A stretch of 64,000 bases of DNA from Macrostomum lignano (taxonomy: Eukaryota), in NCBI GenBank assembly GCA_002269645.1, contig NIVC01003227.1:15485-79484 (forward strand), read 5' to 3'. The notes under the pieces are model-generated. The model saw only the letters and a program-made list of their open reading frames with translations. It had not been told where the DNA came from and did not search any database. Shown here piece after piece: positions 26,443 to 52,015 of this stretch (its first letter is position 1; each line of letters begins with the position of its first letter). The position numbers and the translations under genes are program-made.

Positions 26443-26720
26443 CAGGCCTCCACAATGAGGTTGCCCTGAGCGCTAGGCCTCCACAATGAGGTTGCCCTCA
26501 GCGCTAGGCCTCCACAATGAGGTTGCCCTCAGCGCTAGGCCTCCACAATGAGGTTGCCATGAGCGCTAGGCCTCCACAATGAGGTTGCCCTGAGCGCTAG
26601 GCCTCCACAATGAGGTTGCCCTCAGCGCTAGGCCTCCACAATGAGGTTGCCCTCAGCGCTAGGCCTCCACAATGAGGTTGCCCTGAGCGCTAGGCCTCCA
26701 CAATGAGGTTGTCCTGAGCG
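26443..26720. repeat. 31-bp array (9 units) derived from the last codons and stop of ZF copy A
   Basis: Minus-strand unit gctcagggcaacctcattgtggaggcctagc versus CDS end GCTCAGGACAACCTCATTGTGGAGGCCTAG. Confidence 0.95.
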
Positions 26721-29700
26721 CCAGCGTCTGAGGCGGCGGCCTGCTGGAAGCCGGGTGCGGCGGTGCCGATGACGCGGTCGCTGGGCTGCAGCAGCACAAT
26801 GTTGATGCCGTCCTCCAGCTCGGCCGCGTACTCCTCCTCCTCGCGCTGCGCCGCCGCCTCCTCGTCCGAGTCAGCCAGGCCGAGGCTGAAGTAGTCCTTC
26901 TGCCAGGCCGGCGCCTTCCGCCGACGCCCAGAGCTCGTGTAGCTCGTGCGGGGGTCGTAGTCGTCCTCGAAGTCCTCCACCAGCTCGGCGTTGTCTACCT
27001 GCGGGCGGGCGATCAGCCATTTACAGGGAGCACGCAAACAGAATTGAGCACCGATAGTCAGCAAACCCATCAGCACTGAGCACCACAATGTCACAGCCAC
27101 AAACCCATCAGCACTGAGCACCACAATGTCACAGTCACAAACCCATCAGCACTGAGCACCACAACGTCACAGCCACAAACCCATCAGCACTGAGCACCAC
27201 AATGTCACAGCCACAAACCCATCAGCACTGAGCACCACAATGTCACAGCCACAAACCCATCAGCACTGAGCACCACAACGTCACAGCCACAAACCCATCA
27301 GCACTGAGCACCACAATGTCACAGCCACAAACCCATCAGCACTGAGCGCCACAATGTCACAGCCACAAACCCATCAGCACTGAGCACCACAATGTCACAG
27401 CCACAAACCCATCAGCACTGAGCACCACAATGTCACAGCCACAAACCCATCAGCACTGAGCGCCACAATGTCACAGCCGCAAACCCATCAGCATGAGCAC
27501 CAATCTCAGGCAACAGACTCCTCAAGGTGCCACAGCCACAAACCCATCAGCATGAGCACCAATCTCAAGCAACAGACTCCTCAATGTGCCACAGCCACAA
27601 ACCCATCAGCACTGAGCACCAATCTCAAGCAAAAGACTCCTCAAGGTGCCACTGCCACAAACCCATCAGCACTGAGCACCAATCTCAAGCAAAAGACTCC
27701 TCAAGGTGCCACAGCCACAAACCCATCAGCATGAGCACCAATCTCAAGCAACAGACTCCTCAAGGTGCCACAGCCACAAACCCATCAGCATGAGCACCAA
27801 TCTCAAGCAACAGACTCCTCAAGGTGCCGCAGCCACAAACCATTAAAGCTGTGGGCCCCAATCTCAAGCAACAGACTCCTCAAGGTGCCACTGCCACAAA
27901 CCTCCTCGTAGATCGTGTCCGGATTCGGCCGCACGTAGTTCCCGTCGCCAGCGATGTACTCCTCCTCCTTGTACTCAAACACCCGCTGCCGGCCAGCCTC
28001 CGCAGTTCCCGTCCGCACCATCCGCGGCCGTCCGATCGGCCGTCCGGTGCTCGTCTTCTGTCCGGCCTGGACGGACGGCGGCTCCAGCGGGTTCTTCCGC
28101 GGCCGGCCCCGGGGCTTCTTGTTCAGCCGCCGCTCCGCCTCCTGAACTCGCTTCAGCGCCTCGTACGCAGACTGGCCCATCGCTGAGAGGCCCAGACCGC
28201 CATCGTCCGGACCCTCCATCACCGCCGCCTTCCCGTTCTTGAACCTGTCCTCGTCCGCCTCGTCTGTGTAGCCCTCGCGCTCTCGCCGAATCTTCGACAT
28301 TGCCTCCTCGAACGTCTTGATCATCTTCGGCTTGCGAGTCGACTTTGGCGGCGCCTTGATCAGCGTGTGGTTCACCGGGTCCCGGTTCTGGCTGTGCACC
28401 GCGTGGTGCTTCACCAGGTCCGGCTTGCTGTTCGTCACAAAGTCGCAGTTCTGATACTTGCACGAGAACGGACCATCGTGGCAGCCGCGGATCGCCAGCT
28501 CCTCCTTGTGCACCTCCGTCTTGTGCGCCTCCTTCTCCTCCTTCGACTCGAAGCTGGCCATGCAGTAGCGACACACGTGCCGCTTCGACACCCGCAGCGC
28601 GTGCGCCCGGGTGATGTGGTGGTTCAGCTGGTTGAACCCCGGGAAGCCCTTCTCGCCACAGATCGGGCACGAGATCAGAGTGATGCTCGAGTGAGCCTTC
28701 ACGTGCGACTTCAGCTCCGACAGCTCGTTGATGTAGCAGTTGCAGGTCACGCAGCGGAACTTCGCCTGCAGACTCCGCACTGTCGGGCAGCTCCTCGTGT
28801 GCTTCTTCAGCGTGTAGATGCTGTCGAACGTCACCGAGCAGCCGTTGCACTCCAGGTGCACGCTGCTCGACCCCAGCTGCGAATAGTTCTCCCTCAGCTC
28901 GTGCTCCCTAGTGCGCAGGTGGGCCACCAGTATGTCGAACGTGGTAAACGACTTGTTGCAAATCTCGCACTTGAACGCCCTGTCCATGTTGGGAAAGTGC
29001 ATCCGCCTGTGCTGCAGCATGTTGGACCGCTGCGTGAACCGCTTCGGGCACTTGTCGCACTTAAACGGCTTCTCACCTCGGTGAGCCCGAAGGTGCGCGT
29101 CAAACGTGCCGCCGTTGTTCGTCATGTACGTGCACTGCCGGCAGTGGTAGCGAAAGTCCTTCGGGTTCCTCTTCGGCTTCTTCGCGTCCACGTGGATGCG
29201 CCGCGCGTGCAGGAACAGGTCGCTCAGGTTGGCAAAGTACTTGTCGCACTGACGGCACACAAACGCCTTCAGCAGGTGCCGCTCGCGCAGGTGCTTCGTG
29301 AACGCACCGGCATTCGTAAAGTCTGACGGACAATAATTACACTGGTACACCAGCTGGTCTTTGCCCTGCTGGCCGCCCCGCGACCTCCTCGCATCCTGCG
29401 AGTACGCCTGCACCGCGCCGCCCGCCTCCTCTGCCTCCTCGGCGCCGCCCGACGTCAGCTGGATCTGGATCGGGCCTCCATCTGCCTGCGCCTGGATCTG
29501 CTCAATCACCTCAGATGACAGCTCGAATGTCTCATTGTTGCTCGTTGTCAGCTGGATCTGAACGGGACCGCCAGCTGCCTGAGCCTGGATCTGCTGAATC
29601 ACCTCAGCTGGCAGCTCAATCACCTCGTCACCGCTGCTGCTGCCCAGCTGGATGTGCATGCTGGAGCCGCCCTGGCCCTCATCGGCAGACATGTGCTGCA

Positions 29701-29725
29701 TCAACTCGTCTGGCAGTTCGATCAT
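26690..29725 (-). CDS. C2H2 zinc-finger protein copy A (10 fingers, 2 AT-hook-like motifs, acidic tail); exons 27902-29725 and 26690-26998
   Basis: CxxC...HxxxH arrays, one canonical GEKPF linker, KPRGRPRK and IGRPRM; GAG|gtttgt...cccgcag|GTA joins YEE to VDNAEL in frame. Confidence 0.88.
27063..27900. repeat. Composite intronic minisatellite (39-bp and about 59-bp related units) in ZF copy A
   Basis: cagcactgagcaccacaatgtcacagccacaaacccat and gagcaccaatctcaagcaacagactcctcaaggtgccacagccacaaacccatcagc. Confidence 0.93.
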
Positions 29726-31705
29726 TTTTGCACCTGCAACAGCGGGTTGGATGCATTGGCAGTCCTTTGTAGCAAGTGCAAAACAGCTGCGAACTGCTGG
29801 TTATCAGGGGCCCAAACGGGTCTGCACAACAATTCGACTGCCAGCTGTTTGTCTATCCTTGGCCATGGAAAGGTTCAGAAATCAGCAGTCAAACTGTTGG
29901 CAGTGAGTTAGTGGCAGACTATTGTGCCAAGTTTATCATTATTATTATTATTATTATTATAGCATTGGTTTAAGCTAAAGCCAAGTTAATACTTTTTTTA
30001 AGGAACCAAATATATTAGACCTTTATATATTTAAAAAGGAAAATTGCATTTATTTGTATATTCTTTTTTAAATGGTAATGTGTAATGAAAGACTATTTTA
30101 AAACCATTAGGAAAAAACCACTTTGACCTGTGCAGACTGCACAGCTTTTCTTTGGTTGATATAATTTTAAGTGTTTTAATCTAGTACTAGTAAAATTAAA
30201 GGCTATTAAAATATAATATAAGCACTTATTTTTTATATAGAGATAAAATAGCTTGTAAAATTCTTGCACAACAATAAATCATTTACAAGAAATTCTAGCA
30301 AATTTTTAAGTTTTTTAATGCATAGCATACATGGTGTCTTTTGTAAAGGCCAAAAAGGCACGGTTGCAAGATGTCTACAAATTCATCCAAAGCATACATA
30401 GCTAGCAATGGGTGTTCCCTTTAGATAGCTTGCTGGCTATGTAGACTATGCAAATCATGCCAATTTTGAATACATTTTGTCTTATCCCATTAGCTACTTT
30501 AAGACTAAGCAAATAAACCTAACTAGTATTCTCTTACTTGTCTCATTCTAATTATGTAATTGTACTATGTTTATATTTTTTACAGAGATACTATGATTAA
30601 ATAAATAGGCCTAGCTATAAATCACTTTTTAAAAATTTGTATATGCTAAAATATATTGCTATTTTTCTATGATAGGGTTACAGTGAATTTATCAATAGTT
30701 AAAACAAGCTGAGCAAAGTCATTATCATTAAAAGTCAAAGTCTTAAAGTGGTTCCTTGATGCAATAATGTATAATTTTTGGTAACTAAAAGAGCATGAAT
30801 AAAATAAATAAAAATTTTGCCAAAGACTTCAACATGATTTCATGATATACTAAATGTTATTGTACTTTTATGACTTAAAACCTGACAACTTAGGCAATTT
30901 ATGCTATATAAATACTATATTGTACATAGTTAAGTATCAAAATACAAAATATAGTCAACAGCATAATGTCAGGTAACCAAATTTGTCAACAATGCATAGT
31001 AAGATAAACAGAAAATGTCAAATTTATTAATGAATTAGATATTGACAAATTTGGTAGAACCCCTATGATGATCTTGCTTAGTTATATTTATTATCATAAG
31101 TTGTTCTATTGTTTGTGTGCATATTGTTTTTTTATTGCTAGGCTTAAACTTTTTCATTGTATATATAGCACATTATATGTAATAGAATGTTTCCCTACAA
31201 AATATACATGATTTGCATGCTGTTCAATGAATATTGATCAAAGAAACCTATTAGAAAAAATATTCCATAGTTTAGAAGGTGGCCTTTATACCAGAATTGT
31301 CTGGCATATTTTTGCCTTAGCTAACAAACTTGGCATATAGAATTTTCAAGCTTAACATTATGTATATATAGTTGGCATATAAAAAAGCAAAGTTAGTGTA
31401 TATGTTATAGTTAAATATCAACCAACAAAGGCTCTTTAAAAATAATTAGAAATAAAAATGTAATTAATAATGCATTTTAGTAAGGAAAACAAAATTCAAA
31501 AAAAAGAATAATAGTTTTTAACAAAAAAACAGAAATTTTAAAGTTTTGTTTTGTATTTCTAAAGTAATATATTCTTTTAAAATTAGCAATTAGCATATAA
31601 TATAAGCACGTTTATGCTTAGCATAATATCTTTTTGAATTTTATATTGGCATAGGGTTAAAATTGAAAAAACTAATTTTTATTAATATATAATCTAGACT
31701 ATATA

Positions 31706-32568
31706 CAGTGCTAGGCAAGTTAATAGATTTTTTTAATTCGTTAAAAGTTAAAAAGTTAATTCAATTGCTCCAAAAAAATTAACTGTAACTAGTTAAATAT
31801 TTAACTTTTGCCAAAAATTTAACTTCTGAAAAGTTAAAAGTTAAAGTAAATTCCTACTTCCCTAACGGAAAAAGTGACATTTTCCTGGACATGCATCCGG
31901 CACATTTTTAAAATTTCAGGTCGGCGCAGTGCGGCACAGCGTGCGGTGGAGCGCAGGAGGTCATGCGGCGGCGTAGGAAGTTGCATGGCAGCGCGGGAGG
32001 TCGCGCAGCGGCGCAGAAGTCGCGTAGCAGCGCGGGAAGTCGTTCGGTGGCACGACATGGCACAGTATGGTGCAATGCAACAAGGAAATATCTATGCAGC
32101 GCAATGCGGAGCAGCGCAGCAGGGAAAGGCAGAGTCATTACATGTATACAACAATAGATTATAGTAGTCCTTTGGGTAGAATATCAATAGACAATAGTTG
32201 AAGATTCCAGAATCTTCCGGAATATTCAATACATTATAACTTGTAACTGAAAAATTATACATGTAATAGTTTGGGACGCGTTAAATAATGCTTAGAAAGG
32301 CGAAGTTATTTTATGTATGTATTAATTTTACTTTTTAATGGCATACAAGCTGTTGAAACCCGTGGATTTTGAACCCGGGGATTGGGGAACTCCATTTCCA
32401 AGAATTATTAACTTTTGTCATTTAACTTTAACTTACAGAAAAAATTTAATGATTTTTGTTAACTAGTTAATATATAAAAAATGTAACGAAATTTAATGAT
32501 TTAAAAAAAAATTAACTAGTTAATTAACTAGTTAAACAATTAGCCTAACTAGTTAACGCCCAGCATTG
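31706..32568. mobile_element. Non-autonomous hAT-like element (863 bp)
   Basis: Imperfect TIRs cagtgctaggcaagttaa / ttaacgcccagcattg; perfect 8-bp TSD actatata (31698-31705 and 32569-32576); subterminal (aa)gttaa motifs; no transposase ORF. Confidence 0.85.
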
Positions 32569-33306
32569 ACTATATAATAATATATAAACAGACTAGCCAT
32601 TTATGGCTTACTGCCCTTGGCCTACCAATATAATATCTCTATATAGTTCTATATTCTAGTCATAAGACATGAGCATGAGTAAAAGATGGATATGCCCATA
32701 TATGCCACAGGCCATACTCTGGAAGATGCTATTTTGTGGGGAAAATTCTTGCATGCAACAAGGACCCAGGTAGTCTAATACTGTGTGCACAGTATGCATC
32801 AAGGAGTTGGAAAAGTTTTTTGGCATGTTTTATGCAATAGCACCATGTTTAAATATTTTTGGCAGTCCACCACTTTTAGAGCTACTATAGTGTATCTCAT
32901 AGGAATTTTTTAGGCTTTTAAACACATTTTGATACTTTTTAAAATGAATATTCAATTATTGGTATGATAATACCAATAAAATACACAATGTTTTTATTAC
33001 TAGAAGGTAATATATTATTATTTAGATCACTATACTATAAGAATTTCTATAAGTGTTGTTTATCTACTGTCTCTCATTAAAAATTGAATTTTTCATCAGA
33101 CATTGTTTCATAGAATCAGACTTGTTGGCTCTGTAGCTGCTTTCTGCAGTCCAACCCCTACTCCCAACCTCCCAGTCTATGGCATTGGTGCACACTTGGT
33201 GAATTTGATCTAAACCCTCCCACATGTAGCGGGCAAAGCAAAAAAAAGATTCTCGTGGGCACAGTGCATACTCGGGACTATGGGCCACAGGCACAGTAAT
33301 ATTGAT

Positions 33307-38198: not shown

Positions 38199-41100
38199 TC
38201 ACATTTTCCCCTTTCTGCGCCGCTCGTCCAACGACTTCATGATGTGCTTCATCTGCACGTCCGTGAAGCTGAAGATGCCGATCATGGCCATCAGGTGCTG
38301 ATGGTTCTGCTCGCGGTCCTTCTCTGTCAGGTAGTGGAACATGGAGTCTCGCAAGAACCTATGAAAAAAGTTCCTGCTTATTTGAAAGCTGATGAAATGG
38401 CGATGCGGCTTTTAAAATCAAATTTCTACCAGAATCCTTTCCTACATGTAGCTCCAGGGGGAGTAAGCACCATTGGCACCATGCAGTACCATGGACGTCG
38501 GGTGCGCTAGTGTCAGGGGCGCCAGTACCGTACACGATCGCTAGTGTCAGGGGCACCAGTACCGTACACACCGCTAGTGTCAGGGGCACCAGTACCGTAC
38601 ACCATCGCTAGTGTCAGGGGCACCAGTACCGTACACACCGCTAGTGTCAGGGGCACCAGTACCGTACACCATCGCTAGTGTCAGGGGCGCCTGCCGTAGG
38701 GGTGTAATGCTACCACATGCAACTATAGCAACCAAATTGGGGGGGGGGGGCTCTCCCACACGGTTATACTCTACACATGCACAGGCTCTAATCAGCAGAT
38801 CCCTGCGTGGAATCGAATCGATGCAGGGTCCTTGGCGCGAGAGTAAGACGCGTTACTGATTTGCTATTCGGCACCCCAGAATTCCCAAGAAGCCCTAATC
38901 ATCTGGCAGCCGTTGAAGCGTCCCGAAGCAGTGTGCGGAAATCCGAGATCTGGAAGAGCTCACCGCAGTTTAGCTTCGGCCTCAGTTGAGGCTTTGTCGC
39001 TGTCTTCGTAGACCTCCTTCAGCTTGATGGACTGCCACTTCTGGAGGTCATGCTGCGTGATCTCCAGCTTCTCCAGAAGTTCCTCCATCGCCACTTTGTC
39101 CGGCTCTAGGACAGCTAGCTTCTCGATCTGGAAGCGACATAGGGAAGTTACCTTACGAGGTAGTTTGCACTTTGTCGCAAACCAAGCCAGTGTGAGGAGG
39201 GGGGCGATGCCCCATTACGCTGACCTCTGAGCAGAGAATACGCACGTACGTACACAGGCATGCACACATTCTGTGCCTTGGGGAGGGGGGTTGGAACAAG
39301 GGCTCAAATTTAGGTGGGTGCGCACTGAGTTGCACCTGTGAGGTACTTAGGTGCAAGAGTTAGACACGTTAACAGCAGAGCAGCTACTCTACCGCTCGAT
39401 ACGGGCGTTATTACCTTTGTTTCATTTCTTTGATTCAAGCATGACAAAAGCATAATAACAAGAACGCGTAGAAAATTTACCTCGTCCTGCCGCTCGAACC
39501 TGGCAGAGTCGCGGCCCTTCCTGTACATCTCCAGGTAGAGGTCTTGGTGGCGGCGCTCCCTCTCCGCGCACTCGACCTTGAGCTTCTCGAGGGTCTCGGC
39601 CAGACTCTTCTCTCGGACGCAAATCTCGCTGTGCTGCGCTCGCAGGGAGGAGAAGTCGCTGTCCAGCTGGTTGATTTGCACCTGCAGGCCGGCGATTCTC
39701 TCCTCCCGGTCTTTCACCGCGTCCTCGATGCTCTTGCTCTTCTCGTGGTAGAACACGTCCAGCTCAAGCTCGCGCTGCTCGATGACAAAGTACGCCTCGT
39801 CTAGCTGTCGCTGGAGCTCCTTAACCTCGAGGTCCTTGCGCTGCAGCGGCGTCATGTACTGCGACTCGTCCTGCAGGCCCAGCTGCTTCACGGCGTCCTC
39901 GTGCAGTTTCTCGAGCCGCTTCCGGCTGGCCAGGGTCTGCTTGACGGAGATGGACCTGATGGCGCTGCGGTCTGTTGGGAACAGCGGGGAGCAGCATTCA
40001 ACAATTGAGCTGAGAGCTTCTGAGCTTGCCAGTGCCACAGGCAGAATGTGAGAAGCTCTCAACAGCGTCGAACTGTTGAAGGCGTCGTATTGTTATTTTG
40101 ATCAGCAAAATTCAGTTCTGACTTTTAGAGACAAATTAGCCAAAAAAGTGTTCGTGCGAAAAGCAGGAGAAAAACGAGTCAGAAAAATTAAACGCCAAGG
40201 ATTTTGTGCCAGGCTGTGCGGACCAATCCAGTGATGAAGTGCGAGTTTGTTGGAACGAGAATGTGGAACAAAATTTTGCTGCCGCCAAACCCAAGAGCTC
40301 AAATTGTTTTTCGTACTTTCTTGCCTCATTGGTTACCTTTCACACTTGTACTGCTATTGTCCAAGGATACTTTAATCCACGACTTTGTGCAGTTGTAGAT
40401 TGGAGATTTGGCAATAACAGCCTCCTCTGTAAAATCACAGTTAGTGGAAACTGTGTACTATCTTTGAGCTACCTGTAGTTTATATTAATTTTCAGAGCTG
40501 CTACGCTGCTAGACTTACGAACTATTTCCACTTCGTTTTCTGCGTCTGGAATTAATAAATTAATAAACAGGTGACGCATGCATCCCGGCAACCCTAAACT
40601 GCTGAAACAGATGGTGCACTGTTGAAAGCAACTCACCGTGCTGTTGGGCGGTGGATTTCTCCGCTTCTCCAGCCTTGTGCCTGGAGACTCGGCCGCCTGC
40701 GCTGCTTGAAGCCTGTCTAGTCTTGAGTGGGAGATGCTGTCCATTCTCATCGCTGTCTCGATGCTTCATCTCGTCGTTGTCGATAGTGGCGTAGGTGACA
40801 ACTTGGTCCACCGTGGGAGAATTGAAGTGAACCTTCTTGCTGCCCCTCCTGCTTGTCTGGCCAGTGCCCTGGCTCTGCTTAGTGTCGCTTGCGGCTCCCT
40901 TCTCCAGGTGTTCCTCCCGCTTCTCCGGGGCTGCCCGGCTGAGTGGCTTGAAATCGATTTTAACCGGGCTGTAACCCGACTCGATTAAGTGACTGATCGG
41001 CTTCTTGGCCGCTGAGCCGGAGCGAATGTACGTTGAGTACTCCTCAACTGTGCGGCGGGGGCAGGAGGCGCTGCGCTTCACTGGCAGACGAGATTTCATT

Positions 41101-43779
41101 CTCGACCGGCTTCCCTCCGTGCAGCCCTCCACAGACGAGTTGTTCTCGTGAGAGTGCCGCCTCGGGCCGAGACCGTCAACAATGTCTTTGTCCGTCACCG
41201 GGGAGGCCGGAATCAAGGACTCGCACTTCGACTCCTTCGACTCATATTCGTGAGCTGCTGGAGCCAGGCAGGACAGAACCTCCTCCTGCTGCTTCCTGGC
41301 AGCCTCCAGCTCTCTTTGGCGCCTGGCCTTGGCCTCCAAGATCTGCCGTCGCCTGACCGACTGGTTCGAGCTCAAGTCCAGCTCCACAGGCTCCATCTCC
41401 TCATCCTCTTCCTCCTCTTGGCTCTCGGACACTCGGTTGAAGACAGGCTTCGGGGCAGGCTTGTCCTCGGGCTCAGTTGGTTGGCTTTCCGGACTGTTTG
41501 ACTCGATGAGAGAGCCCAGCTTCACAGAGATGTCTACAAGATCGACCGTGCTATCTTCAACGCACACCTCCGCCTTCTCGAAGGACGCCAGTTCCTCTTC
41601 GCTGGGACTGATCAGCGCCTCGCTCTTAGCTATTAATTGCTTAGTGCGCTGGGAATCTTCAACATCCTTGGGAAACACGTCGCTGCCACCGCTGCTGCCT
41701 TCTACCTCGTCGACCTGCACTTGCGGTTTCTCCGACTTCTCAACTTCAGCCTCAACTGGTGAGTCGCTAGTTGAGTAGCCGTAGCCGCTGTCGGACTCGG
41801 AGATTTGGTTCTGGAGAATGGCAACGCGATGAGACTTTCCTTCTGGTTCCTCCTTGGATTTCTTGGCCTCTGGTTTTTCCGCCGTCTGCTGAGTTTCTTG
41901 ATACCTCTCTGCCTCCGCCTTGGCCTGTGGTTTCTCCGTTTGCTGAGTTTCTTGGCACTTCTCCGCCTCCGTCGCCTCCGCCGTCTCCGCCACCGACTCT
42001 GGCATCGTCTTTCTGCTGTCATAGTCTGCCAAGTCCATTTCCGACTCCAGCTGCGCCAGGTCCTCCTCGGTGAGACCCACGGTTTCCTGCGCTTTTACAG
42101 CCTCCTCTGTCTCCTCCATGATCGTCGAAATACCACCTTGGCTCATGTCGTACTCCATCTTTTTCTTCGCTTTCACTTCTTCCTGCTCAGGCTCCGGATC
42201 CTTTTGGTCCTCTTGCAGTCCTCTCTGGTCCTCAGTTGGATCAAGAAATCCTTCCAGCAAGTCCTCAACTTGCACTTTCTCTTCCTCGTGAATCTCGAAA
42301 ACTTCCACCTCAGCTGCGCAGCTCGACTCGACAACTGTTTCCTTGGCAACCGAAGGGCTATCGAGTGACTCCAGCAGTTCGAGCTGTCCGGTAATCGGAT
42401 CCTCCGCGCCTCCACCGCTCAGCGCCTCCGCGTCGGGCACGATCAAGTCGAGGCTAACGGGCTCGGCAGGGGGGAACTGCAGCTCGCTCTCGGCCTGTTG
42501 AGCTGCTGCCTCCGCGACTGCGCTGGGACTGGCTGGCTGCTCCTGTCTGCGCCTGAACGTGATCCTGCAGGGGAGTTTGAAATCGATTCTTCACGTAGCA
42601 TTTTTCTATTGCCTGCAAATATCTATTTTCATTAGCCCCAGAAACAATCGATATCCCAGGAGAGCACTGGGGGTTGGGCGGCATGGGGTGATTCGCTGAG
42701 CATGCGATATTGCTTCGGCGAGTGCGCCAGGGAAAAGTCTAGAACTGGGCCTTCCTTGGTCGCTGCGCACCTGCCGATTCCCGATAGCTTTCTGCATTTC
42801 TCCCCCGCGAGACCCACCTCCCTTCCACATTCCGACAACCGCATGCTGCTCGACTGCCTAATAAAATTGCAAAGCACATTTTCTCTCCCGTGCCCAATGC
42901 TCAGCTCAAGCAATGCTCGTCATGCATGAATTGGGGCCTCGGTGTGGGCGTTGGATTTTGTCTCGATGACACGCAGTCTTGCACCATTTTGCAACTCTGT
43001 TGTTCTGGTAGAAGCTCGGAGATCCAAGCTCGAATAACTAAGAATTCAGGAAACGAGACGAACCTCTGGCTTAACTAATATCGTGTTAGCTTACGCTCGT
43101 AATCGCCTCGCCTCCGGAGGTGCAATCGCCTCGGGTTCAGGACACGTTGAAGCAATAGTTGCTATGGAGCACTGAGGACCGGCCATATTTAGCTGGATTC
43201 CAATATCTCATTTCAGTCAGTCATATTGACTAGCTCTATATTCGATTTTAATTAAGCATTTGGTCCATGTAATAACAAAAAATTCATACTACTCTACTAA
43301 AAGTAGTCATATGAAATTTATGTAACAAATCGATTTCGATTAATCTTTTTCACTGGATCATTTTATCTACATTGTGGTACTGAAATACATCGAAAAATTC
43401 ACCAATCGCACCTGTGGAGCCTTAGTCATAAAACAAAGAACAGTACGGACACATCAAACTGCTCAAGTGCTCACAGCTTGCCAATGTTGCCAAACAGGCT
43501 TCGGTAGCGGCGCCTCTTAGCAGCCGGAGTTGCCAGGCCGGTGGCGGAGCTCTCCTCGGCAACTGCGCCACCGGCTGCCTCCGGCTCCGCCAACGCGCAA
43601 GCCGTTTTCAACGCCGTCTCCGTCGGAATCTCCGCATCAGATGCCGGCGACAGAGACGCCTCGCCGTTAGGTAAGCCATCCGGCTCCGTTAAGGCTTCGG
43701 TCGTCGTCTGCTCCGCCTGAGGCTGCTGCAGGTCGGTCACCTGCTGCATGATGCAATCGTCTTCAGCTAAAGTGTCCAT
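38199..43779 (-). CDS. qtc: Coiled-coil protein with C-terminal GRIP-like domain, similar to insect quick-to-court; exons 43475-43779, 40637-42564, 39481-39971, 38964-39127, 38199-38358
   Basis: Phase-consistent GT-AG chain; coiled coil ending HQDLYLEMYRKGRDSARFE; terminal AKLRFLRDSMFHYLTEKD...HLMAMIGIFSFTD recalls the GRIP pattern. The qtc assignment is from memory. Confidence 0.7.
38506..38690. repeat. 32-35-bp minisatellite (about 6 copies) in the last intron of the GRIP gene
   Basis: gctagtgtcaggggcaccagtaccgtacac unit. Confidence 0.9.
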
Positions 43780-44861: not shown

Positions 44862-44956
44862 AATCAGCGGTCGCAGCACGTGACAACGATTTGTCTATGG
44901 CTCGCGCCTTCCGGCGCTCGCCAGACAATCATTGTCACGCACTGGGACCGCTGATT
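44862..44956 (-). other. 95-nt hairpin, candidate structured RNA
   Basis: About 35-bp outer stem plus an inner GGC-GA-GCGCC-GGAA-GGCGC-GA-GCC; most mismatches become G-U pairs on the minus strand. Confidence 0.6.
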
Positions 44957-45439
44957 ATTTATCCATTGATTGCACAGATTTCCTGCCTCTTTCATTAATA
45001 TTTATTCTTTCCATGGCGCTGCTTCCAGTGGTGATGGAGACGGAGTCCTGCATGCCGTCCTGGACGTCGAGACTAGAAAATTGGACTTTAGGAAAAAGAG
45101 TCAACACATAATTTGTTTCGTGGAGAGATTGAGAGATTTATTGTTTAAATATTCTGCGGTGTGAGCAAGAGCGACACGTCAGTCCCACAGTATACCATAA
45201 GCCCGTATATTCAGGTAGAGAGACGTTAAGCGAGTGAGTAAACTCAGCTTCCATCTGCATGTACGTTTAGGAGTCGTCCTTGCGTTTATAGGTTCATGAT
45301 AATAATGTCTTCTAGTATATCTAATTCTTTATAATACTATTCTTTTTTCCGTTCTTTGGTGACTTTTTTCACCTGACCTAATTATGGACAGACGTGCAAC
45401 CGACCAGCTCTGCAGCCTATTCGGATCCTAGTTTTTTCC

Positions 45440-45518
45440 GAGTTGGGTCGAGAATCGAACCCCCGACCTTGCAATCGCGAGTTCGACGATCTAACCAAGA
45501 GGCTACAACCCCCCCCCC
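45440..45518 (-). mobile_element. tRNA-derived SINE head or tRNA pseudogene
   Basis: Minus strand GGGGGTTGTAGCCTCTTGGTTAG (A-box-like)...CTCGCGA loop...GGTTCGATTC (B box); acceptor and anticodon stems pair poorly. Confidence 0.6.
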
Positions 45519-45631
45519 AGGTAGACTGTAAACTGCAAGAACTAGGCCTACTCAAGTAGGGAAACCTCCTTTTTATTCTACGTACAATTGTACATGTCCT
45601 GTGCCTAAACAAAAATGGCACAGCTCCTAAC

Positions 45632-46008
45632 ACTCGATTCCGCCCCCCCCTTACAGTCGATTCCGCCCCTTACAGTCGATTCCGCCCCCCCCTTACAGTC
45701 GATTCCGCCCCTTACAGTCGATTCCGCCCCCCCCCTTACAGTCGATTCCGCCCCCCCCTTACAGTCGATTCCGCCCCCCCTTACAGTCGATTCCGCCCCC
45801 CCCTTACAGTCGATTCCGCCCCTTACAGTCGATTCCGCCCCTTACAGTCGATTCCGCCCCTTACAGTCGATTCCGCCCCTTACAGTCGATTCCGCCCCTT
45901 ACAGTCGATTCCGCCCCTTACAGTCGATTCCGCCCCTTACAGTCGATTCCGCCCCTTACAGTCGATTCCGCCCCTTACAGTCGATTCCGCCCCTTACAGT
46001 CGATTCCG
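45632..46008. repeat. About 20-bp minisatellite with variable C-run (ttacagtcgattccgcccc), about 18 copies
   Basis: Direct periodicity. Confidence 0.95.
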
Positions 46009-49000
46009 ACTCATTGGTTTTATGGATCTATTTTGTCATTCTATCAGATTTTATCAGATTCTTTTATCAGAATCAATTCTTTTAAAATCTTTTATCAGAT
46101 TTTGTCAGATGATAAAATCGATTCATAAAGCCAATGAGTCCAGCTGTGCCATACATTTCTATGATTTTTAAGTACAGGTAATGTACGTAGAACAAAACAT
46201 TAACAAAGAATCTTAATTTTCTAAACGAAAAACTTTATGAATATCGATAGAGCTATAAAAAGGCATATACAACATATCAAAGATGAACACTGGGCCTGCC
46301 TCCTATCGAAATTAATAACAAAAGTCAGTATCAACATGCAGTGTTTAGTTATTTATTTAAGTTGCCGATGCATTTCCTCCAACTATTAAACATCTTCAAG
46401 GTCGAAATTTACTCGAACCAAATGATTTAACAAGCAAACAGTATATATAGTAAGTGGAGAGAAGTATGAAAGTACATGCAATTTTATTGAATTTTTATGG
46501 TTTGAAAAACTTTTACATATTAATCGAAACTAGAAACAATATTGGTAGGGGGGGAATTTGCGTACAAAGGCCGGCATATAGTGGTAGAAGTCAGAGATGG
46601 CCACGATCAACAGTCTTGGCTGCAGTGTCACGAAAATAGCTCGGAGGGCCCGCGACTTTGTTGCACTATTTTGTTAACTCTGTTGCATACATATCAGGAT
46701 GCATTTGGGGCTAGCTTGCTCATTTCGGATCTTCATGCCGCTACAATGGTACTTGGTTTGCCTGCAGTTTCTCATGCAGGGGCACGTAGCAATTCGGTGC
46801 CCATCTAGAGGAATTAGCAGATTTTTGAACACACATTAGTCTTGCCAAATCAACTAGCTGATCGATTTAAATCTATTCGACTACTTTTGTGGGACTACAA
46901 ATGCTCCAAGGACTACTTTAGTAGAATATAGCGTTTCTAGTGGTCCTTGATTGATGCTCGTGCCCACGTCATGGATCAGACGCGACGGGCTAGAGGCTTC
47001 TTGGATTCAAATCTTGGGCGCAGCCATTAAGAGCTGCATTCATTAATGGACTCAAAAAAGACTAGATGAATGCTGTCTGCAATGCAGTTGACGGCTTCTT
47101 GGTCGCCTTCATGAGTTGCTAATTGCAATAATGTTGGCGCATACATGTATGCAATTTTGAGGCAACGCGGCCGGCTTGATGACACACGTGGACTTTCTAA
47201 CAGCTAGGGCATGTACATGCAAGACATGAATGTAGCTAAGGCTGGTCGAAATCATGGTTTTTGTTAATTTTCATTGTTCCTGCTCGCCTTTTAGTATCTG
47301 AAATTTTTATGAATATATGTGAAATTTGTCTACACAATGGCCACCATGCAATCCAGGGAAGCAATTAATTGTTGGCAGAGAGAACCTAAATAATTTTTCA
47401 AGACGAGACGAGAGTATAAACTCGCACATGTTGACGGCACAACTGACAAGTTACGGAGTTTATAGACAAAACTGCTCACTCACAGTTATGTACGCATGCG
47501 ACCCTTTTATGGGACACCACGTTGTTTTGAACCGTGGTTTATTCGATGAGGCCATCAGTGATAATGAGATATAATTTTTTACCTTAAAACTTAAGAAATT
47601 TGTTTTTAAAGCCAGTCGAATCGTTTATTTGTAATTATCAGCCAAAATTATGTCGTATTGCGACCTTTCGCAAGTTAAAAAATCGTTAAAAACGATCTTA
47701 CTAATTTTAAATTAGATGACGGCTTGTATTTTTTGACATAAACAAAAAGTCCATTTTTCGCTATTAGAAAACGACTTTTATTATTTAAAAACGCAGTTCA
47801 ATTCATGCCAAGAAGCAAATAAAACTTAATTTGCATGACTCTGTAGATTTTATATCATTTTTTGTTTTAATATACGACACAAATAATAACTGCTGTTCTA
47901 TGTATGTTATAACTGATTAAAATTTATAATTATACATTTGTATTTATATTATGTATGCTTTATAAAACAGTCAAAGAATACACAATCCAAAAATGGTGCC
48001 GAAAATTTCAGTATCTTTATCACTTTTATGTTATTCTCAGTGCGACATCTTTCAGCAGTTTTTTGAAATTGTCTAGTGTGGTCTATCAATTGATGCTAAT
48101 CCATTATGGTATTATTTCTACAGAGTTAATGTAGTAGGTCCTATAATAGCACTTAATGTTTAAGAGTTTAGTATACTGTGTTTTCAAATTCTTCTTAAGT
48201 GGCCCATTGGGAATAAATTAATTGAGGCAATGGCAAGTTAGGCCTAATGTGACAAAATGCATAACTCATTCATCTATTTACCAATGACTAGGCCTATTGT
48301 TCAGCATTAAAATGTTTTGCTAGTTTAAAATGAATGAACTTAAATAAAGACAAAAAACTTGGAATAAAACCAGTCCCATACTTCATATTGAAAATATATT
48401 AGGAGGGCTATTGTATTATTTGTAAGAATATAATTATAAAAAAAACAAATTTAAAATAAAAAATATCTTATCTTTTCAAATGCTACATATTGCATATAAA
48501 TTCTAAATCTAAATATTAGTTTTGTAGCTTAAAAATCTTTATAGCTAGCTATAGTCCCTATAGTAATAAAATTTCATTTCTAATAACTCTATTTCAGCAT
48601 TCATAAACATTTATTATTAGGCCTAAATGGAGCAAAAGAAAAAATGACTTAGGGTGAAGCCTTAGGATTTTATATTTCTATAGCCAACAACTAATTACAT
48701 AAATTAAGCCCTATATAACTAGAAATTAAAAAAACAATGGATGTAAAGGACAAAGATCTAAAAAGGTTATATAATGTGATAAGCCTACATTTTCACTAAA
48801 ATTTAATAACCTAATATATAAGATTTGGCAAGTATCTTAAGCAAGAATATCAAAAAGGCCATACACAACAAATATACTAAAAATGGTTTGTTGGTATCTA
48901 GGTATATGATTGATTTTAGAAAAAACCTAAGAAATGATTTGTGTTTAGTACATTTAAAAGGAAGTCTAAATGTAGAATATAGAATCCATAATCCAACCCG

Positions 49001-49017
49001 CTGTTGCAGGTGCAAAA

Positions 49018-51764
49018 ATGATCGAGCTGCCAGACGAGTTGATGCAGCACATCCCTGCCGATGAGGGCCAGGGCGGCTCCAGCATGCACATCCAGCTGGG
49101 CAGCAGCAGCGGTGACGAGGTGATTGAGCTGCCAGCTGAGGTGATTCAGCAGATCCAGGCTCAGGCAGCTGGCGGTCCCGTTCAGATCCAGCTGACAACG
49201 AGCAACAATGAGACATTCGAGCTGTCATCTGAGGTGATTGAGCAGATCCAGGCGCAGGCGGACGGAGGCCCGATCCAGATCCAGCTGACATCGGGCGGCG
49301 CCGAGGAGGCAGAGGAGGCGGGCGGCGCGGTGCAGGCGTACTCGCGGGATGCGAGGAGGTCGCGGGGCGGCCAGCAGGGCAAAGACCAGCTGGTGTACCA
49401 GTGTAATTATTGTCCGTCAGACTTTACGAATGCCGGTGCGTTCACGAAGCACCTGCGCGAGCGGCACCTGCTGAAGGCGTTTGTGTGCCGTCAGTGCGAC
49501 AAGTACTTTGCCAACCTGAGCGACCTGTTCCTGCACGCGCGGCGCATCCACGTGGACGCGAAGAAGCCGAAGAGGAACCCGAAGGACTTTCGCTACCACT
49601 GCCGGCAGTGCACGTACATGACGAACAACGGCGGCACGTTTGACGCGCACCTTCGGGCTCACCGAGGTGAGAAGCCGTTTAAGTGCGACAAGTGCCCGAA
49701 GCGGTTCACGCAGCGGTCCAACATGCTGCAACACAGGCGGATGCACTTTCCCAACATGGACAGGGCGTTCAAGTGCGAGATTTGCAACAAGTCGTTTACC
49801 ACGTTCGACATACTGGTGGCCCACCTGCGCACTAGGGAGCACGAGCTGAGGGAGAACTATTCGCAGCTGGGGTCGAGCAGCGTGCACCTGGAGTGCAACG
49901 GCTGCTCGGTGACGTTCGACAGCATCTACACGCTGAAGAAGCACACGAGGAGCTGCCCGACAGTGCGGAGTCTGCAGGCGAAGTTCCGCTGCGTGACCTG
50001 CAACTGCTACATCAACGAGCTGTCGGATCTGAAGTCGCACGTGAAGGCTCACTCGAGCATCACTCTGATCTCGTGCCCGATCTGTGGCGAGAAGGGCTTC
50101 CCGGGGTTCAACCAGCTGAACCACCACATCACCCGGGCGCACGCGCTGCGGGTGTCGAAGCGGCACGTGTGTCGCTACTGCATGGCCAGCTTCGAGTCGA
50201 AGGAGGAGAAGGAGGCGCACAAGGCGGAGGTGCACAAGGAGGAGCTGGCGATCCGCGGCTGCCACGACGGTCCGTTCTCGTGCAAGTATCAGAACTGCGA
50301 CTTTGTGACGAACAGCAAGCCGGACCTGGTGAAGCACCACGCGGTGCACAGCCAGAACCGAGACCCGGTGAACCACACGCTGATCAAGGCGCCGCCAAAG
50401 TCGACTCGCAAGCCGAAGATGATCAAGACGTTCGAGGAGGCAATGTCGAAGATTCGGCGAGAGCGCGAGGGCTACACGGACGAGGCGGACAACGAGGACA
50501 GGTTCAAGAACGGGAAGGCGGCGGTGATGGAGGGTCCGGACGATGGCGGTCTGGGCCTCTCGGCGATGGGCCAGTCTGCGTACGAGGCGCTGAAGCGAGT
50601 TCAGGAGGCGGAGCGGCGGCTGAACAAGAAGCCCCGGGGCCGGCCGCGGAAGAACCCGCTGGAGCCGCCGTCCGTCCAGGCCGGACAGAAGACGAGCACC
50701 GGACGGCCGATCGGACGGCCGCGGATGGTGCGGACGGGAACTGCGGAGGCTGGCCGGCAGCGGGTGTTTGAGTACAAGGAGGAGGAGTACATCGCTGGCG
50801 ACGGGAACTACGTGCGGCCGAATCCGGACACGATCTACGAGGAGGTTTGTGACAGTGGCACTTTAAGGAGTCTGTTGCTTGAGATTGGTGCTCATGCTGA
50901 TGGGTTTGTGGCTTGTGGCACCTTGAGGAGTCTGTTGCTTGAGATTGGTGCTCATGCTGATGGGTTTGTGGCTTGTGACACCTTGGGGAAACTGTTGCTT
51001 GAGATTGGTGCTCATGCTGATGGGTTTGTGGCTGTGACATTGTGGTGACCACTGCTGATGGGTTTGTGGCTGTGACATTGTGGTGCTCATGCTGATGGGT
51101 TTGTGGCTGTGACATTGTGGTGCTCAGTGCTGATGGGTTTGTGGCTGTGACATTGTGGTGCTCAGTGCTGATGGGTTTGTGGCTGTGACATTGTGGTGCT
51201 CATGCTGATGGGTTTGTGGCTGTGGCACCTTGAGGAGTCTGTTGCTTGAGATTGGTGCTCATGCTGATGGGTTTGTGGCTGTGACATTGTGGTGCTCAGT
51301 GCTGATGAGTTTGTGGCTGTGACATTGTGGTGACCACTGCTGATGGGTTTGTGGCTGTGACATTGTGGTGCTCAGTGCTGATGGGTTTGCTGACTATCGG
51401 TGCTCAATTCTGTTTGCGTGCACCCTGTAAATGGCTGATCGCCCGCCCGCAGGTGGACAACGCCGAGCTGGTGGAGGACTTCGAGGACGACTACGACCCC
51501 CGCACGAGCTACACGAGCTCTGGGCGTCGGCGGAAGGCGCCGGCCTGGCAGAAGGACTACTTCAGCCTCGGCCTGGCCGACTCGGACGAGGAGGCGGCGG
51601 CGCAGCGCGAGGAGGAGGAGGAGTACGCGGCCGAGCTGGAGGACGGCATCAACATTGTGCTGCTGCAGCCCAGCGACCGCGTCATCGGCACCGCCGCACC
51701 CGGCTTCCAGCAGGCCGCCGCCTCAGACGCTGACGCTCAGGACAACCTTATTGTGGAGGCCTAG
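49018..51764 (+). CDS. C2H2 zinc-finger protein copy B (near-identical inverted paralog of copy A); exons 49018-50844 and 51453-51764
   Basis: Translation differs from copy A at few sites (MS/IP, Q/R, E/D, T/A, +N, +E, G/D); same splice sites. Confidence 0.88.
50845..51380. repeat. Composite intronic minisatellite in ZF copy B (same unit families as copy A, different arrangement)
   Basis: gctgatgggtttgtggctgtgacattgtggtgctca and caccttgaggagtctgttgcttgagattgg units. Confidence 0.93.
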
Positions 51765-52015
51765 CGCTCAGGGCAACCGCATTGTGGAGGCCTAGCGCTC
51801 AGGGCAACCGCATTGTGGAGGCCTAGCGCTCAGGGCAACCTCATTGTGGAGGCCTGGCGCTCAGGGCAACCTCATTGTGGAGGCCTAGCGCTCAGGGCAA
51901 CCTCATTGTGGAGGCCTGGCGCTCAGGGCAACCTCATTGTGGAGGCCTGGCGCTCAGAGCAACCTCATTGTGGAAGCCTAGCGCTCAAGGCAACCTCATT
52001 GTGGAGGCCTGGCGC
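51733..52015. repeat. 31-bp stop-codon array of ZF copy B (9 units, some TAG changed to TGG)
   Basis: attgtgga recurs at 31-bp spacing from 51750 to 51998. Confidence 0.95.

What the first reader, a model, noticed from the sequence alone, without database searches (positions are those of the whole stretch)
26443..52015. Recent inverted zinc-finger duplicate whose homology starts 17 nt before the acceptor and ends exactly at a stop-codon array
Copy A (26443-29752, minus) and copy B (48991-about 52012, plus) are head-to-head about 19 kb apart around the GRIP gene and differ by only a few residues. Shared sequence begins at atccaacccgctgttgcag and ends at the last TGG-type unit of the 31-bp array; the flanks look unrelated. 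The duplicated unit is therefore acceptor + CDS + intron + array, with no evident promoter or first exon. That would be functional if the gene is trans-spliced (a portable promoter-less cassette). Alternatively, old paralogs are homogenised by gene conversion bounded by the arrays.
Basis: partly seen in the sequence, partly recalled or inferred. Interest (0 to 1): 0.7.

Follow-up and report, generated by a model that had tools for sequence, protein, structure and literature searches.

The report
Inverted duplicate of trans-spliced zinc-finger gene
Two near-identical, head-to-head copies of a flatworm (Macrostomum lignano) zinc-finger gene are real, but they are an ordinary DNA-level duplication that a sister genome block also carries, and the striking start "just before the splice acceptor" comes from a later 1.1-kb sequence change next to one copy.

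Summary
Copy A (29752..26442, minus) and copy B (48991..52015, plus) are inverted arms around a 19.2-kb spacer. Their CDSs differ by 0.84%, and the flanks in this window are unrelated.

The window is the last 64 kb of contig NIVC01003227.1 of the published Macrostomum lignano assembly Mlig_3_7. This flatworm uses spliced-leader (SL) trans-splicing and is a neopolyploid. A paralogous contig, NIVC01000735.1, is collinear over 44.5 kb and carries the same pair with the same A-type and B-type 3' flanks. The duplication is therefore not private to this contig and not an assembly fold-back.

Three of the four copies share a further 25-57 nt upstream. Copy A in the window has a private 1147-nt replacement that abuts ATCCAACCC, and copy B has a private ~117-nt deletion. 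The boundary "17 nt before the acceptor" is therefore secondary.

The 3' end is a true breakpoint inside a 31-bp minisatellite. About 16% of this window is minisatellite.

TTGCAG|G matches the species' SL acceptor motif, and the annotated CDSs start 5'-partial right after it, so trans-splicing is likely but not shown by reads. All four copies are under purifying selection (dN/dS 0.12-0.17). They show incompatible site patterns, which indicate exchange between arms. Interest is modest.

The parts
26442..29752 (-). Copy A: the whole arm (acceptor region, CDS exon 1, intron, exon 2, 31-bp array). GenBank PAA52510.1, Mlig005392g1.
29734..29752 (-). Copy A: the 19 nt ATCCAACCCGCTGTTGCAG ending in the presumed SL trans-splice acceptor (AG at 29735-29734). 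The exon starts at 29733 and the ATG is at 29725.
   Evidence: sequence; motif [T/C]TNCAG from PMC8629364; 5'-partial CDS start at 29728
27902..29725 (-). Copy A CDS exon 1 (C2H2 zinc fingers).
26999..27901 (-). Copy A intron (903 nt), almost all 59-bp and 38-bp minisatellite.
26690..26998 (-). Copy A CDS exon 2, including the TAG stop (26692-26690).
26442..26721 (-). Copy A 31-bp array (9 units; the first unit is the end of the CDS). It is followed by the A-type 3' flank, which A_735 shares.
29753..30899 (.). A 1147-nt block private to the window's copy A. It replaces the ~63 nt that lie upstream of ATCCAACCC on the paralogous contig, and it creates the apparent homology start.
48962..48990 (+). 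Remnant of the ancestral upstream part of the duplicated unit kept by copy B. It is alignable to A_735 and B_735 but absent from copy A of the window.
48991..52015 (+). Copy B: the whole arm. GenBank PAA52512.1, Mlig002564g1.
48991..49009 (+). Copy B: the 19 nt ending in the presumed SL acceptor (AG at 49008-49009). The exon starts at 49010 and the ATG is at 49018.
   Evidence: annotated CDS starts at 49012 (AKM...)
49018..50844 (+). Copy B CDS exon 1.
50845..51452 (+). Copy B intron (608 nt) with 60-bp and 38-bp minisatellites.
51453..51764 (+). Copy B CDS exon 2, including the TAG stop (51762-51764).
51734..52015 (+). Copy B 31-bp array. The duplication breakpoint lies in its last unit. It is followed by the B-type flank CTAGGAGTTGCC..., which B_735 shares.
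38199..43779 (-). CDS of the 1015-aa coiled-coil gene in the spacer (PAA52511.1, Mlig019548g1; UniRef calls it 'GRIP domain-containing protein'). It is on the same strand as A, 8.5 kb upstream of A. It is divergent from B, with 5.2 kb between the CDS start and B's acceptor.

Best explanation
This is a DNA-level, inverted segmental duplication of a conserved flatworm C2H2 zinc-finger gene in Macrostomum lignano.

The unit that was copied ran from roughly 75-90 nt upstream of the gene's 5' splice acceptor to a point inside the 31-bp minisatellite that starts at the stop codon. It includes the intron. It carries no recognisable promoter.

The event happened once. It predates the separation of at least two of the species' paralogous genome blocks, because both blocks carry the same pair with the same flanks. 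Afterwards the AT-rich upstream edges were eroded independently. In the window, copy A gained a 1147-nt replacement that stops 19 nt before the exon, and copy B lost ~117 nt. Everything from the 19-nt acceptor region onwards was kept.

The gene is most likely SL trans-spliced at TTGCAG|G (inferred). If so, any transcription entering from upstream would give the same mature mRNA, which would explain why a copy with a foreign upstream region remains intact and constrained. Copy A lies in a co-oriented run of genes: the GRIP-like gene, then A, then a 1296-aa gene that also has a YTNCAG acceptor 5 nt before its ATG. Copy B is divergent from the GRIP-like gene.

The arms, and possibly the paralogous blocks, have exchanged sequence since then, by gene conversion or crossovers between the inverted arms. 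This keeps the four CDSs within 0.4-0.8% of each other.

Shown here: the structure, the boundaries, the shared ancestry, the selective constraint and the incompatible site patterns. Inferred: SL addition, the source of transcription for each copy, and that A is the parental position.
For: Identity and organism: P0001 and its cluster are M. lignano proteins. The window is 100% identical to NIVC01003227.1.

Same pair on NIVC01000735.1: the two protein accessions lie two apart on one contig. The loci are L001 and L002. The contigs are collinear over 44.5 kb. The A-type and B-type 3' junctions are shared.

5' boundary: there are 25-57 extra shared nt in A_735, B_735 and B_win. Copy A of the window has a private 1147-nt block that matches nothing else held locally.

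No further flank homology.

Constraint: dS is 0.0125-0.025 and dN/dS is 0.12-0.17 for all six pairs.

Exchange: the informative sites are 49008 and 51743 (AB|A'B'), 49026 (AA'|BB'), and 49731, 50028 and 50361 (AB'|BA'). Parallel mutation gives two or more such sites with P about 4e-4.

Trans-splicing: the SL acceptor motif and its frequency are in PMC8629364. The annotation pipeline cuts transcripts at SL sites (PMC5730564). The CDSs start AKM, KM or VQKM immediately after the AG. The neighbouring 1296-aa gene shows the same signature, TTACAG|TAGGATG.

Background: minisatellites cover ~16% of the window and 15% of the genome (PMC5730564).
Against: No RNA reads were available, so SL addition and expression of each copy are unproven.

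Both copies on the paralogous contig read TTGCTG, with no AG, at the presumed acceptor.

Arm-to-arm identity (differences of 0.84% and 0.42%) is not clearly higher than identity between the contigs (0.47-0.75%). Classical concerted evolution is therefore not demonstrated. The mosaic site patterns could also come from consensus mixing among near-identical paralogues in a PacBio assembly.

Divergence between the contigs is heterogeneous: 2.9-5.4% left of about 38.6 kb and 1.2-1.3% to the right. The order of duplication and block separation is therefore not simple.

Which copy is parental is not established. The Taenia orthologue has no shared neighbours.
Confidence: 0.7

Rival explanations
1. 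The duplicated unit is a functional, portable, promoter-less cassette. Its ends are defined by function (acceptor ... array), and trans-splicing makes it expressible wherever it lands.
For: Only ~75-90 nt of upstream DNA was ever part of the unit. Two independent indels trimmed the upstream DNA to 19 nt (A) and about 48 nt (B) before the exon without breaking the ORFs. dN/dS is about 0.15. The acceptor motif matches.
Against: The exact start 17 nt before the acceptor is a private secondary event in one copy. There are only two genomic positions per block and no further dispersed copies in the window or in the protein cluster. Nothing therefore suggests mobility. A promoter is still needed and none was identified. 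The 3' end lies at an arbitrary point in a minisatellite, in a window that is 16% minisatellite.
Confidence: 0.25
2. The copies are much older paralogues whose similarity is maintained wholly by gene conversion. On this view the homology ends are limits of conversion tracts rather than duplication breakpoints.
For: Incompatible site splits exist among the four copies. The outermost shared upstream ~50 nt of A_735 and B_735 is more diverged (4 of 47) than synonymous sites inside the arms (6 of 485; Fisher P = 0.008). dS between A_735 and B_735 (0.0125) is below the neutral divergence between the contigs on the A side (3.7-5%; P = 0.001).
Against: The flanks show no residual similarity at all, even at word size 7. 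The B-type junction is abrupt, lies within a repeat unit and is nearly identical on both contigs. Within-contig arms are not closer than between-contig copies. The small upstream segment is hypervariable even between the orthologous B copies (5 of 29 nt differ, read from the alignment), which weakens the edge argument.
Confidence: 0.2
3. It is an assembly artefact: a fold-back chimera, a haplotig or a mis-joined paralogue.
For: Mlig_3_7 is a redundant PacBio assembly of a neopolyploid with three about 98% similar subgenomes (PMC10733133; PMC5730564). Divergence between the two contigs steps abruptly near 38.6-39.2 kb.
Against: The arms are separated by 19 kb of unique, gene-bearing DNA. They differ by SNPs, by two codon indels and by 295 nt of intron array. 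The same arrangement, with its own SNPs, is on a second contig. An ML2-assembly gene model (P0122) runs from the antisense strand of B into the GRIP-like gene, so a different assembler gave the same B/GRIP arrangement.
Confidence: 0.04
4. It is a transposon-mediated gene capture or a retrocopy.
For: The genome is rich in transposable elements (PMC5730564). The copied unit is short and gene-sized.
Against: The intron is retained and there is no poly(A) tract, so it is not a retrocopy. No terminal inverted repeats or target-site duplications above chance flank B on either contig. No other copies are present.
Confidence: 0.04

Closest known systems
SL trans-spliced genes and outrons of Macrostomum lignano (Wudarski et al. 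2017, PMC5730564; Ustyantsev and Berezikov 2021, PMC8629364)
   Same: The acceptor TTGCAG at the exon start matches the published motif [T/C]TNCAG. The 5' UTR is very short (8 nt). The transcript models begin at the acceptor. The same-strand neighbour gene shows the same signature.
   Different: SL reads for this gene were not seen here. The two paralogous-contig copies lack the AG in the assembly.
Inverted-repeat (palindrome-like) segmental duplications with arm-to-arm gene conversion, such as the human Y and X chromosome palindromes (recalled from my own knowledge, not tested against those loci)
   Same: There are head-to-head arms around a unique spacer. Arm identity is high. There are signs of sequence exchange between the arms.
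   Different: The arms are only ~3 kb and the spacer is 19 kb, much longer than the arms. Arm identity does not exceed the identity between paralogous blocks. The evidence for conversion rests on six sites.
Post-WGD paralogous blocks of the M. lignano subgenomes S, L1 and L2 (PMC10733133)
   Same: The two contigs are collinear. They differ by 1.2-5% in SNPs and by large indels, as described genome-wide (2.2% SNPs; most differences are indels).
   Different: The feature of interest is a local inverted duplication inside such a block, not the whole-genome duplication itself.
Eukaryotic operons resolved by SL trans-splicing (nematodes, flatworms; criteria of PMC8629364)
   Same: Copy A is co-oriented with an upstream gene and with a downstream gene that looks trans-spliced and lies about 1.0-1.3 kb away.
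   Different: The raw distance from the upstream gene to A is 8.5 kb. Copy B has no co-oriented upstream gene within 10 kb.

Membership tests
SL trans-spliced gene (M. lignano) | An acceptor of type [T/C]TNCAG directly at the start of the first annotated exon | tested here: met
   TTGCAG|GTGCAAAAATG is present in both window copies. The motif is from PMC8629364. Both copies on contig NIVC01000735.1 read TTGCTG instead.
SL trans-spliced gene (M. lignano) | Transcript models start at the acceptor, with no cis-spliced upstream exon | tested here: inconclusive
   The GenBank CDSs are 5'-partial and begin AKM or KM, and an ML2 model begins VQKM. That places the start 0-8 nt after the AG.
SL trans-spliced gene (M. 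lignano) | RNA-seq reads carrying the 35-nt SL joined to the exon | not testable with these tools
   No M. lignano RNA contigs for this gene are in the collections. The gene identifiers were not found in papers or in the supplements held.
Operon member (criteria of PMC8629364: adjacent, co-oriented, downstream gene SL trans-spliced, repeat-adjusted distance under 1 kb) | A co-oriented upstream gene within 1 kb after repeats are subtracted | tested here: inconclusive
   Copy A is co-oriented with the GRIP-like gene but lies 8.5 kb downstream of it in raw distance. That interval is AT-rich and largely unalignable between the contigs. No repeat library was available to adjust the distance. For copy B the criterion is not met, because its upstream gene is on the opposite strand.
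Palindrome with arm-to-arm gene conversion | Arms more similar to each other than to their orthologous or homeologous counterparts | tested here: not met
   CDS differences are 0.84% for A_win-B_win and 0.42% for A_735-B_735. They are 0.75% for A-A' and 0.51% for B-B'.
Palindrome with arm-to-arm gene conversion | Phylogenetically incompatible sites or tracts between arms | tested here: met
   Six informative sites fall into three different splits, and three sites with the same split (AB'|BA') are clustered at 49731-50361. Chance P is about 4e-4. Assembly mosaicism is not excluded.
Retrocopy | Loss of introns, a poly(A) remnant and target-site duplications | tested here: not met
   The intron is present in both copies. 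There is no poly(A) and no target-site duplication.
Transposon-captured gene fragment | Terminal inverted repeats or element ends flanking the captured unit, and multiple dispersed copies | tested here: not met
   Only chance-level matches occur between the B flanks on both contigs, and there are no other fragments in the window. The protein cluster holds only the four GenBank copies plus ML2 models.
C2H2 zinc-finger protein conserved in flatworms | Multiple C2H2 fingers and orthologues across Platyhelminthes | tested here: met
   Pfam zf-C2H2 scores 78 bits over 4 stretches. Orthologues with 40-62% identity occur in cestodes, trematodes and monogeneans, with E-values from 1e-135 to 1e-85.

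The most novel reading that the evidence does not exclude
In a genome with SL trans-splicing, the minimal heritable gene unit may be just a ~19-nt 3' splice-site region plus the coding sequence. Here two independent indels pared the upstream DNA of two paralogues down towards the acceptor, to 19 nt in one copy and about 48 nt in the other. The inverted copy kept an intact, constrained ORF with an entirely foreign upstream region. That would make this locus a natural example of trans-splicing rescuing promoter-less DNA duplicates, and the inverted arms would additionally undergo reciprocal exchange (flip-flop inversion of the 19-kb spacer).
Probability: 0.3. Interest if true: 0.5.

Novelty: new member of a known kind. 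Interest (0 to 1): 0.25.

Why it matters
If copy-specific RNA data confirm it, the locus would be a clean, small example of how SL trans-splicing uncouples a gene from its upstream DNA and lets a promoter-less segmental duplicate survive. This bears on why trans-splicing genomes tolerate rapid turnover of upstream regions.

It also cautions users of the M. lignano model. This zinc-finger gene exists in at least four near-identical copies, arranged as inverted pairs on two paralogous blocks. That affects RNAi, knock-out and read-mapping designs.

Otherwise it is an ordinary local duplication in a duplicate-rich, minisatellite-rich neopolyploid genome.

Tried and rejected
1. I looked for flank homology after allowing for insertions, using blastn at word sizes 7-11 on 5-10 kb flanks in both contigs. 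Nothing appeared beyond ~57 extra upstream nt.

2. I searched for terminal inverted repeats or target-site duplications around copy B on both contigs. Only chance-level matches were found.

3. I searched for other fragments of the unit in the window and found none.

4. Neither an Rfam gathering-threshold scan nor a search for the 35-nt SL sequence gave any match.

5. I used synteny of a neodermatan orthologue (Taenia crassiceps, L005) to decide which copy is parental. No neighbours are shared, so it is uninformative.

6. I examined Logan RNA contigs of distant relatives (L006, L007, L008) for an SL at the 5' end. They come from other species and samples, and no recognisable SL is present.

7. 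I searched the literature and supplements for the four gene identifiers and got no hits.

8. I first read the '.g2' in Mlig032423g2 as 'second gene of a transcriptional unit'. I rejected this because the GRIP-like gene is Mlig019548g1 on one contig and Mlig019548g2 on the other, so the index numbers paralogues.

9. Pfam does not confirm a GRIP domain in the spacer gene. The name comes only from UniRef.
Full report

Yes. The repeat finder reports inverted arms 28248-29752 / 48991-50495 (1505 nt, 99%). Further collinear pieces run down to 26442 and 52012-52020, and 19,238 nt lie between the arms. blastn of the two regions with 5-kb flanks gives one collinear set, 29752..26442 against 48991..52012/52015. 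Nothing significant lies outside it, even at word size 7.

Reading the sequence, both arms begin with ATCCAACCCGCTGTTGCAG|GTGCAAAAATG. The bases just upstream differ...CCAATGC in A and ...ATCCATA in B. Both arms end in a 31-bp tandem array (TRF: 9.0 and 9.1 units). The first unit of that array is the last 31 nt of the CDS including the TAG. The last unit carries TGG instead of TAG.

The gene models are:
- B: 49018-50844 + 51453-51764 (712 aa).
- A: 29725-27902 + 26998-26690 (710 aa).

The donor is GAG|GTTTGT and the acceptor is CCCGCAG|GT. The proteins differ by six substitutions and two one-residue indels. The intron is almost entirely 59/60-bp and 38-bp minisatellite. It is 903 nt in A and 608 nt in B.

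**2. What and where is it?**

The protein is 100% identical over its whole length to a GenBank protein of Macrostomum lignano. Loci L003 and L004 are 100% identical to window 39012-61795 and 16690-39728. The window is therefore the last 64 kb of contig NIVC01003227.1 of assembly Mlig_3_7 (GCA_002269645.1).

- Copy A is PAA52510.1 (Mlig005392g1).
- Copy B is PAA52512.1 (Mlig002564g1).
- The gene between them is PAA52511.1 (Mlig019548g1, 1015 aa). UniRef calls it 'GRIP domain-containing protein', although Pfam finds no domain.

The zinc-finger protein has C2H2 fingers. It has clear orthologues in cestodes, trematodes and monogeneans at 40-62% identity. It is a conserved flatworm gene, not a lineage-specific expansion.

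M. lignano has SL trans-splicing. Published estimates are that 30-39% of genes are trans-spliced. The SL is the 35-nt sequence CGGTCTCTTACTGCGAAGACTCAATTTATTGCATG, and the acceptor motif is [T/C]TNCAG (PMC8629364; PMC5730564). The species is also a neopolyploid with three paralogous subgenomes. These differ by about 2% in SNPs and by many large indels (PMC10733133).

**3. The paralogous contig changes the picture.**

The 90% protein cluster holds two more GenBank members, PAA77556.1 and PAA77554.1. Their accessions are again two apart on one contig, NIVC01000735.1. I fetched both loci (L001, L002) and joined them. This gives 44.5 kb that is collinear with window 15936-61053 and carries both copies in the same places and orientations.

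*3' junctions.* A_win and A_735 share the flank ...CCTGG(AA/CG)TTAGTTTGTCTGTAATTAATG.... B_win and B_735 share ...GCG(C/G)|CTAGGAGTTGCCATTACTCC.... The inverted duplication therefore arose once. It is older than the separation of these two blocks, at least on the B side. It is not a contig-specific assembly fold-back. An ML2-assembly gene model (P0122) runs from the antisense strand of copy B into the GRIP-like gene. A different assembler therefore produced the same B/GRIP arrangement.

*5' junction.* A_735, B_735 and B_win share additional sequence upstream of ATCCAACCC. This is 25 nt at 96% plus a further ~37 nt at 84% between A_735 and B_735. B_win keeps about 29 nt of it (48962-48990) and then has a private ~117-nt deletion relative to B_735.

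Copy A of the window has lost all of it. On contig 735, 63 nt separate the arm from the next alignable block. In the window, 1147 nt lie there instead (29753-30899). That block matches nothing else held locally.

The boundary '17 nt before the acceptor' is therefore the edge of a private replacement next to copy A. It is not the edge of the duplicated unit. The original unit began about 57-75 nt further upstream, roughly 75-90 nt before the AG. Beyond that point the A and B upstream regions are unrelated on both contigs.

The 3' boundary is a genuine breakpoint within an array unit. Minisatellites occupy ~16% of this window and 15% of the genome. A breakpoint inside one is therefore not very surprising.

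**4. Trans-splicing.**

TTGCAG|G fits the published acceptor motif exactly. The GenBank annotation derives from a pipeline that cuts transcripts at experimentally mapped SL sites. All four CDSs are flagged 5'-partial and begin AKM... or KM.... An ML2 model begins VQKM..., which reads GTG CAA AAA ATG. The models thus start 0-8 nt after the AG.

The next gene downstream of A on the same strand (1296 aa) shows the same signature: TTACAG|TAGGATG, with a CDS starting right after the AG. I therefore regard SL addition at 49010 and 29733 as likely (about 0.75), but no reads were seen.

One fact against it is that both copies on contig 735 read TTGCTG at this position. I could not resolve whether this is an assembly error, a loss of the site or something else.

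If the SL is added, its terminal AUG creates a four-codon uORF, AUG GUG CAA AAA UGA. The stop of this uORF overlaps the main AUG. In A_735, which has one extra A, the SL AUG is in frame with the protein.

**5. Selection and exchange.**

Over 2136 aligned CDS positions the four copies differ by 0.42-0.84%. dS is 0.0125-0.025 and dN/dS is 0.12-0.17 for every pair. All copies have been under purifying selection.

The relationship is star-like. Within-contig arms (0.84% and 0.42%) are not closer than between-contig pairs (0.47-0.75%). A_win has the most private changes (9 of 19 singletons).

There are six informative sites, and they fall into three mutually incompatible splits:
- 49008 and 51743 group the copies by contig.
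- 49026 groups them by position (A with A', B with B').
- 49731, 50028 and 50361 form a cluster that groups A_win with B_735 and B_win with A_735.

Parallel mutation would give two or more such sites with probability about 4e-4. Sequence has therefore moved between copies. The clustered 'swap' pattern fits either two crossovers between the inverted arms (a double inversion of the spacer) or one conversion between arms of different blocks. Consensus mixing among near-identical paralogues in the assembly could mimic this.

Two weaker hints suggest that the arms are being homogenised:
- The outer ~50 nt shared by A_735 and B_735 is more diverged (4 of 47) than synonymous sites inside the arms (6 of 485; P = 0.008).
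- dS between A_735 and B_735 is below the neutral divergence between the contigs on the A side.

However, the same small upstream segment is hypervariable even between the two B copies, and divergence between the contigs is itself heterogeneous. It is 2.9-5.4% left of about 38.6 kb and 1.2-1.3% to the right.

**6. How it most likely works.**

A DNA-level event copied the acceptor region, CDS, intron and part of the 3'-UTR array in inverted orientation to the other side of the GRIP-like gene. The mechanism is unknown. There are no transposon ends and no target-site duplication. The intron is retained, so it is not a retrocopy.

Copy A sits in a co-oriented run on the minus strand: the GRIP-like gene, 8.5 kb, A, about 1.0-1.3 kb, the 1296-aa gene, then a filamin gene. 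Copy B is divergent from the GRIP-like gene. It lies 5.2 kb from that gene's CDS start, and 3.9 kb if the ML2 5' exons are real.

Trans-splicing discards whatever lies upstream of the acceptor. Either copy would therefore yield the same mRNA from any incoming transcription. This is the simplest way to explain three things. Copy B stayed intact with a foreign upstream region. A_win tolerates a 1.1-kb replacement that ends 19 nt from the exon. The A upstream interval is almost unalignable between the two contigs. These last steps are inference.

**7. Comparison with known kinds, and novelty.**

The locus combines three well-described things: an SL trans-spliced flatworm gene, a local inverted segmental duplication with some exchange between arms, and post-WGD paralogous blocks.

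It fails the test for classical palindrome-style concerted evolution, because the arms are not closer to each other than to the homeologous copies. It also fails the tests for a retrocopy and for transposon capture. It passes the sequence-level tests for an SL acceptor in the window copies.

Both genes are already annotated in GenBank, but I found no description of the pair. I file it as a new member of a known kind, with modest interest.

The most novel reading not excluded is that this is a natural example of trans-splicing rescuing a promoter-less DNA duplicate, with selection keeping only ~19 nt of acceptor plus the gene.

**8. Dead ends.**

Taenia synteny, Logan RNA contigs from distant relatives, paper and supplement searches for the gene identifiers, and the Rfam and SL-gene scans of the window did not help.

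Noticed in passing
window 49008 / 29735; L001 about 9993 and L002 about 9994: Both zinc-finger copies on the paralogous contig NIVC01000735.1 read TTGCTG where the window copies read TTGCAG. The presumed SL acceptor AG is therefore missing there, although their annotated CDSs also start right after it.
   Followed up: partly
window 49010-49021 and 29733-29722: Joining the SL (which ends ...TTGCATG) to GTGCAAAAATGA would make a 4-codon uORF (AUG GUG CAA AAA UGA) whose stop overlaps the main AUG. In A_735 an extra A puts the SL AUG in frame, and the ML2 model P0116 starts VQKM.
   Followed up: partly
window 15936-38586 versus 39241-61053: Substitution divergence between the two paralogous contigs steps from 2.9-5.4% on the left to 1.2-1.3% on the right. 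The change falls near a 34-bp array at the 3' end of the GRIP-like gene. This points to a mosaic history (homeologous exchange) or a chimeric contig.
   Followed up: partly
window 26999-27901 and 50845-51452; L001 and L002 introns: The single intron is a 59/60-bp plus 38-bp minisatellite. Its length differs in all four copies: 903, 608, 418 and 991 nt. The 60-bp units keep the reading frame open for about 33 codons into the intron.
   Followed up: partly
window 48991-51719, minus strand: The antisense strand of the zinc-finger CDS is open for more than 600 codons. An ML2 gene model (P0122, 1885 aa) fuses this antisense ORF to the GRIP-like gene, which is probably a spurious model.
   Followed up: yes
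window 25404-25417, minus strand: The 1296-aa gene downstream of copy A has TTACAG|TAGGATG and a 5'-partial CDS starting right after the AG. This is the same trans-splice signature. It lies about 1.0 kb from the end of copy A's array, which would be an operon-like spacing.
   Followed up: partly
window 29753-29935: The 180 nt of copy A's private block nearest the gene is ~50% GC, unlike the AT-rich remainder. It contains several CTGCCA-like repeats. Its origin is unknown, and it has no match in the window or in the fetched loci.
   Followed up: partly
whole window: Twenty-four minisatellite arrays (periods 14-72 bp) cover about 16% of the 64 kb.
   Followed up: yes
window 38199-43779, minus strand: UniRef names the spacer gene 'GRIP domain-containing protein'. 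Pfam finds no GRIP domain or any other domain in the 1015-aa product, even at E <= 1.
   Followed up: yes
window 49018-49300 (protein residues 1-95): The N-terminus of the zinc-finger protein holds three ~29-residue repeats of the form (V/M)IELP.E.(I/M)QQIQAQA.GGP.QIQLT. The corresponding DNA repeats appear as internal blastn matches.
   Followed up: no
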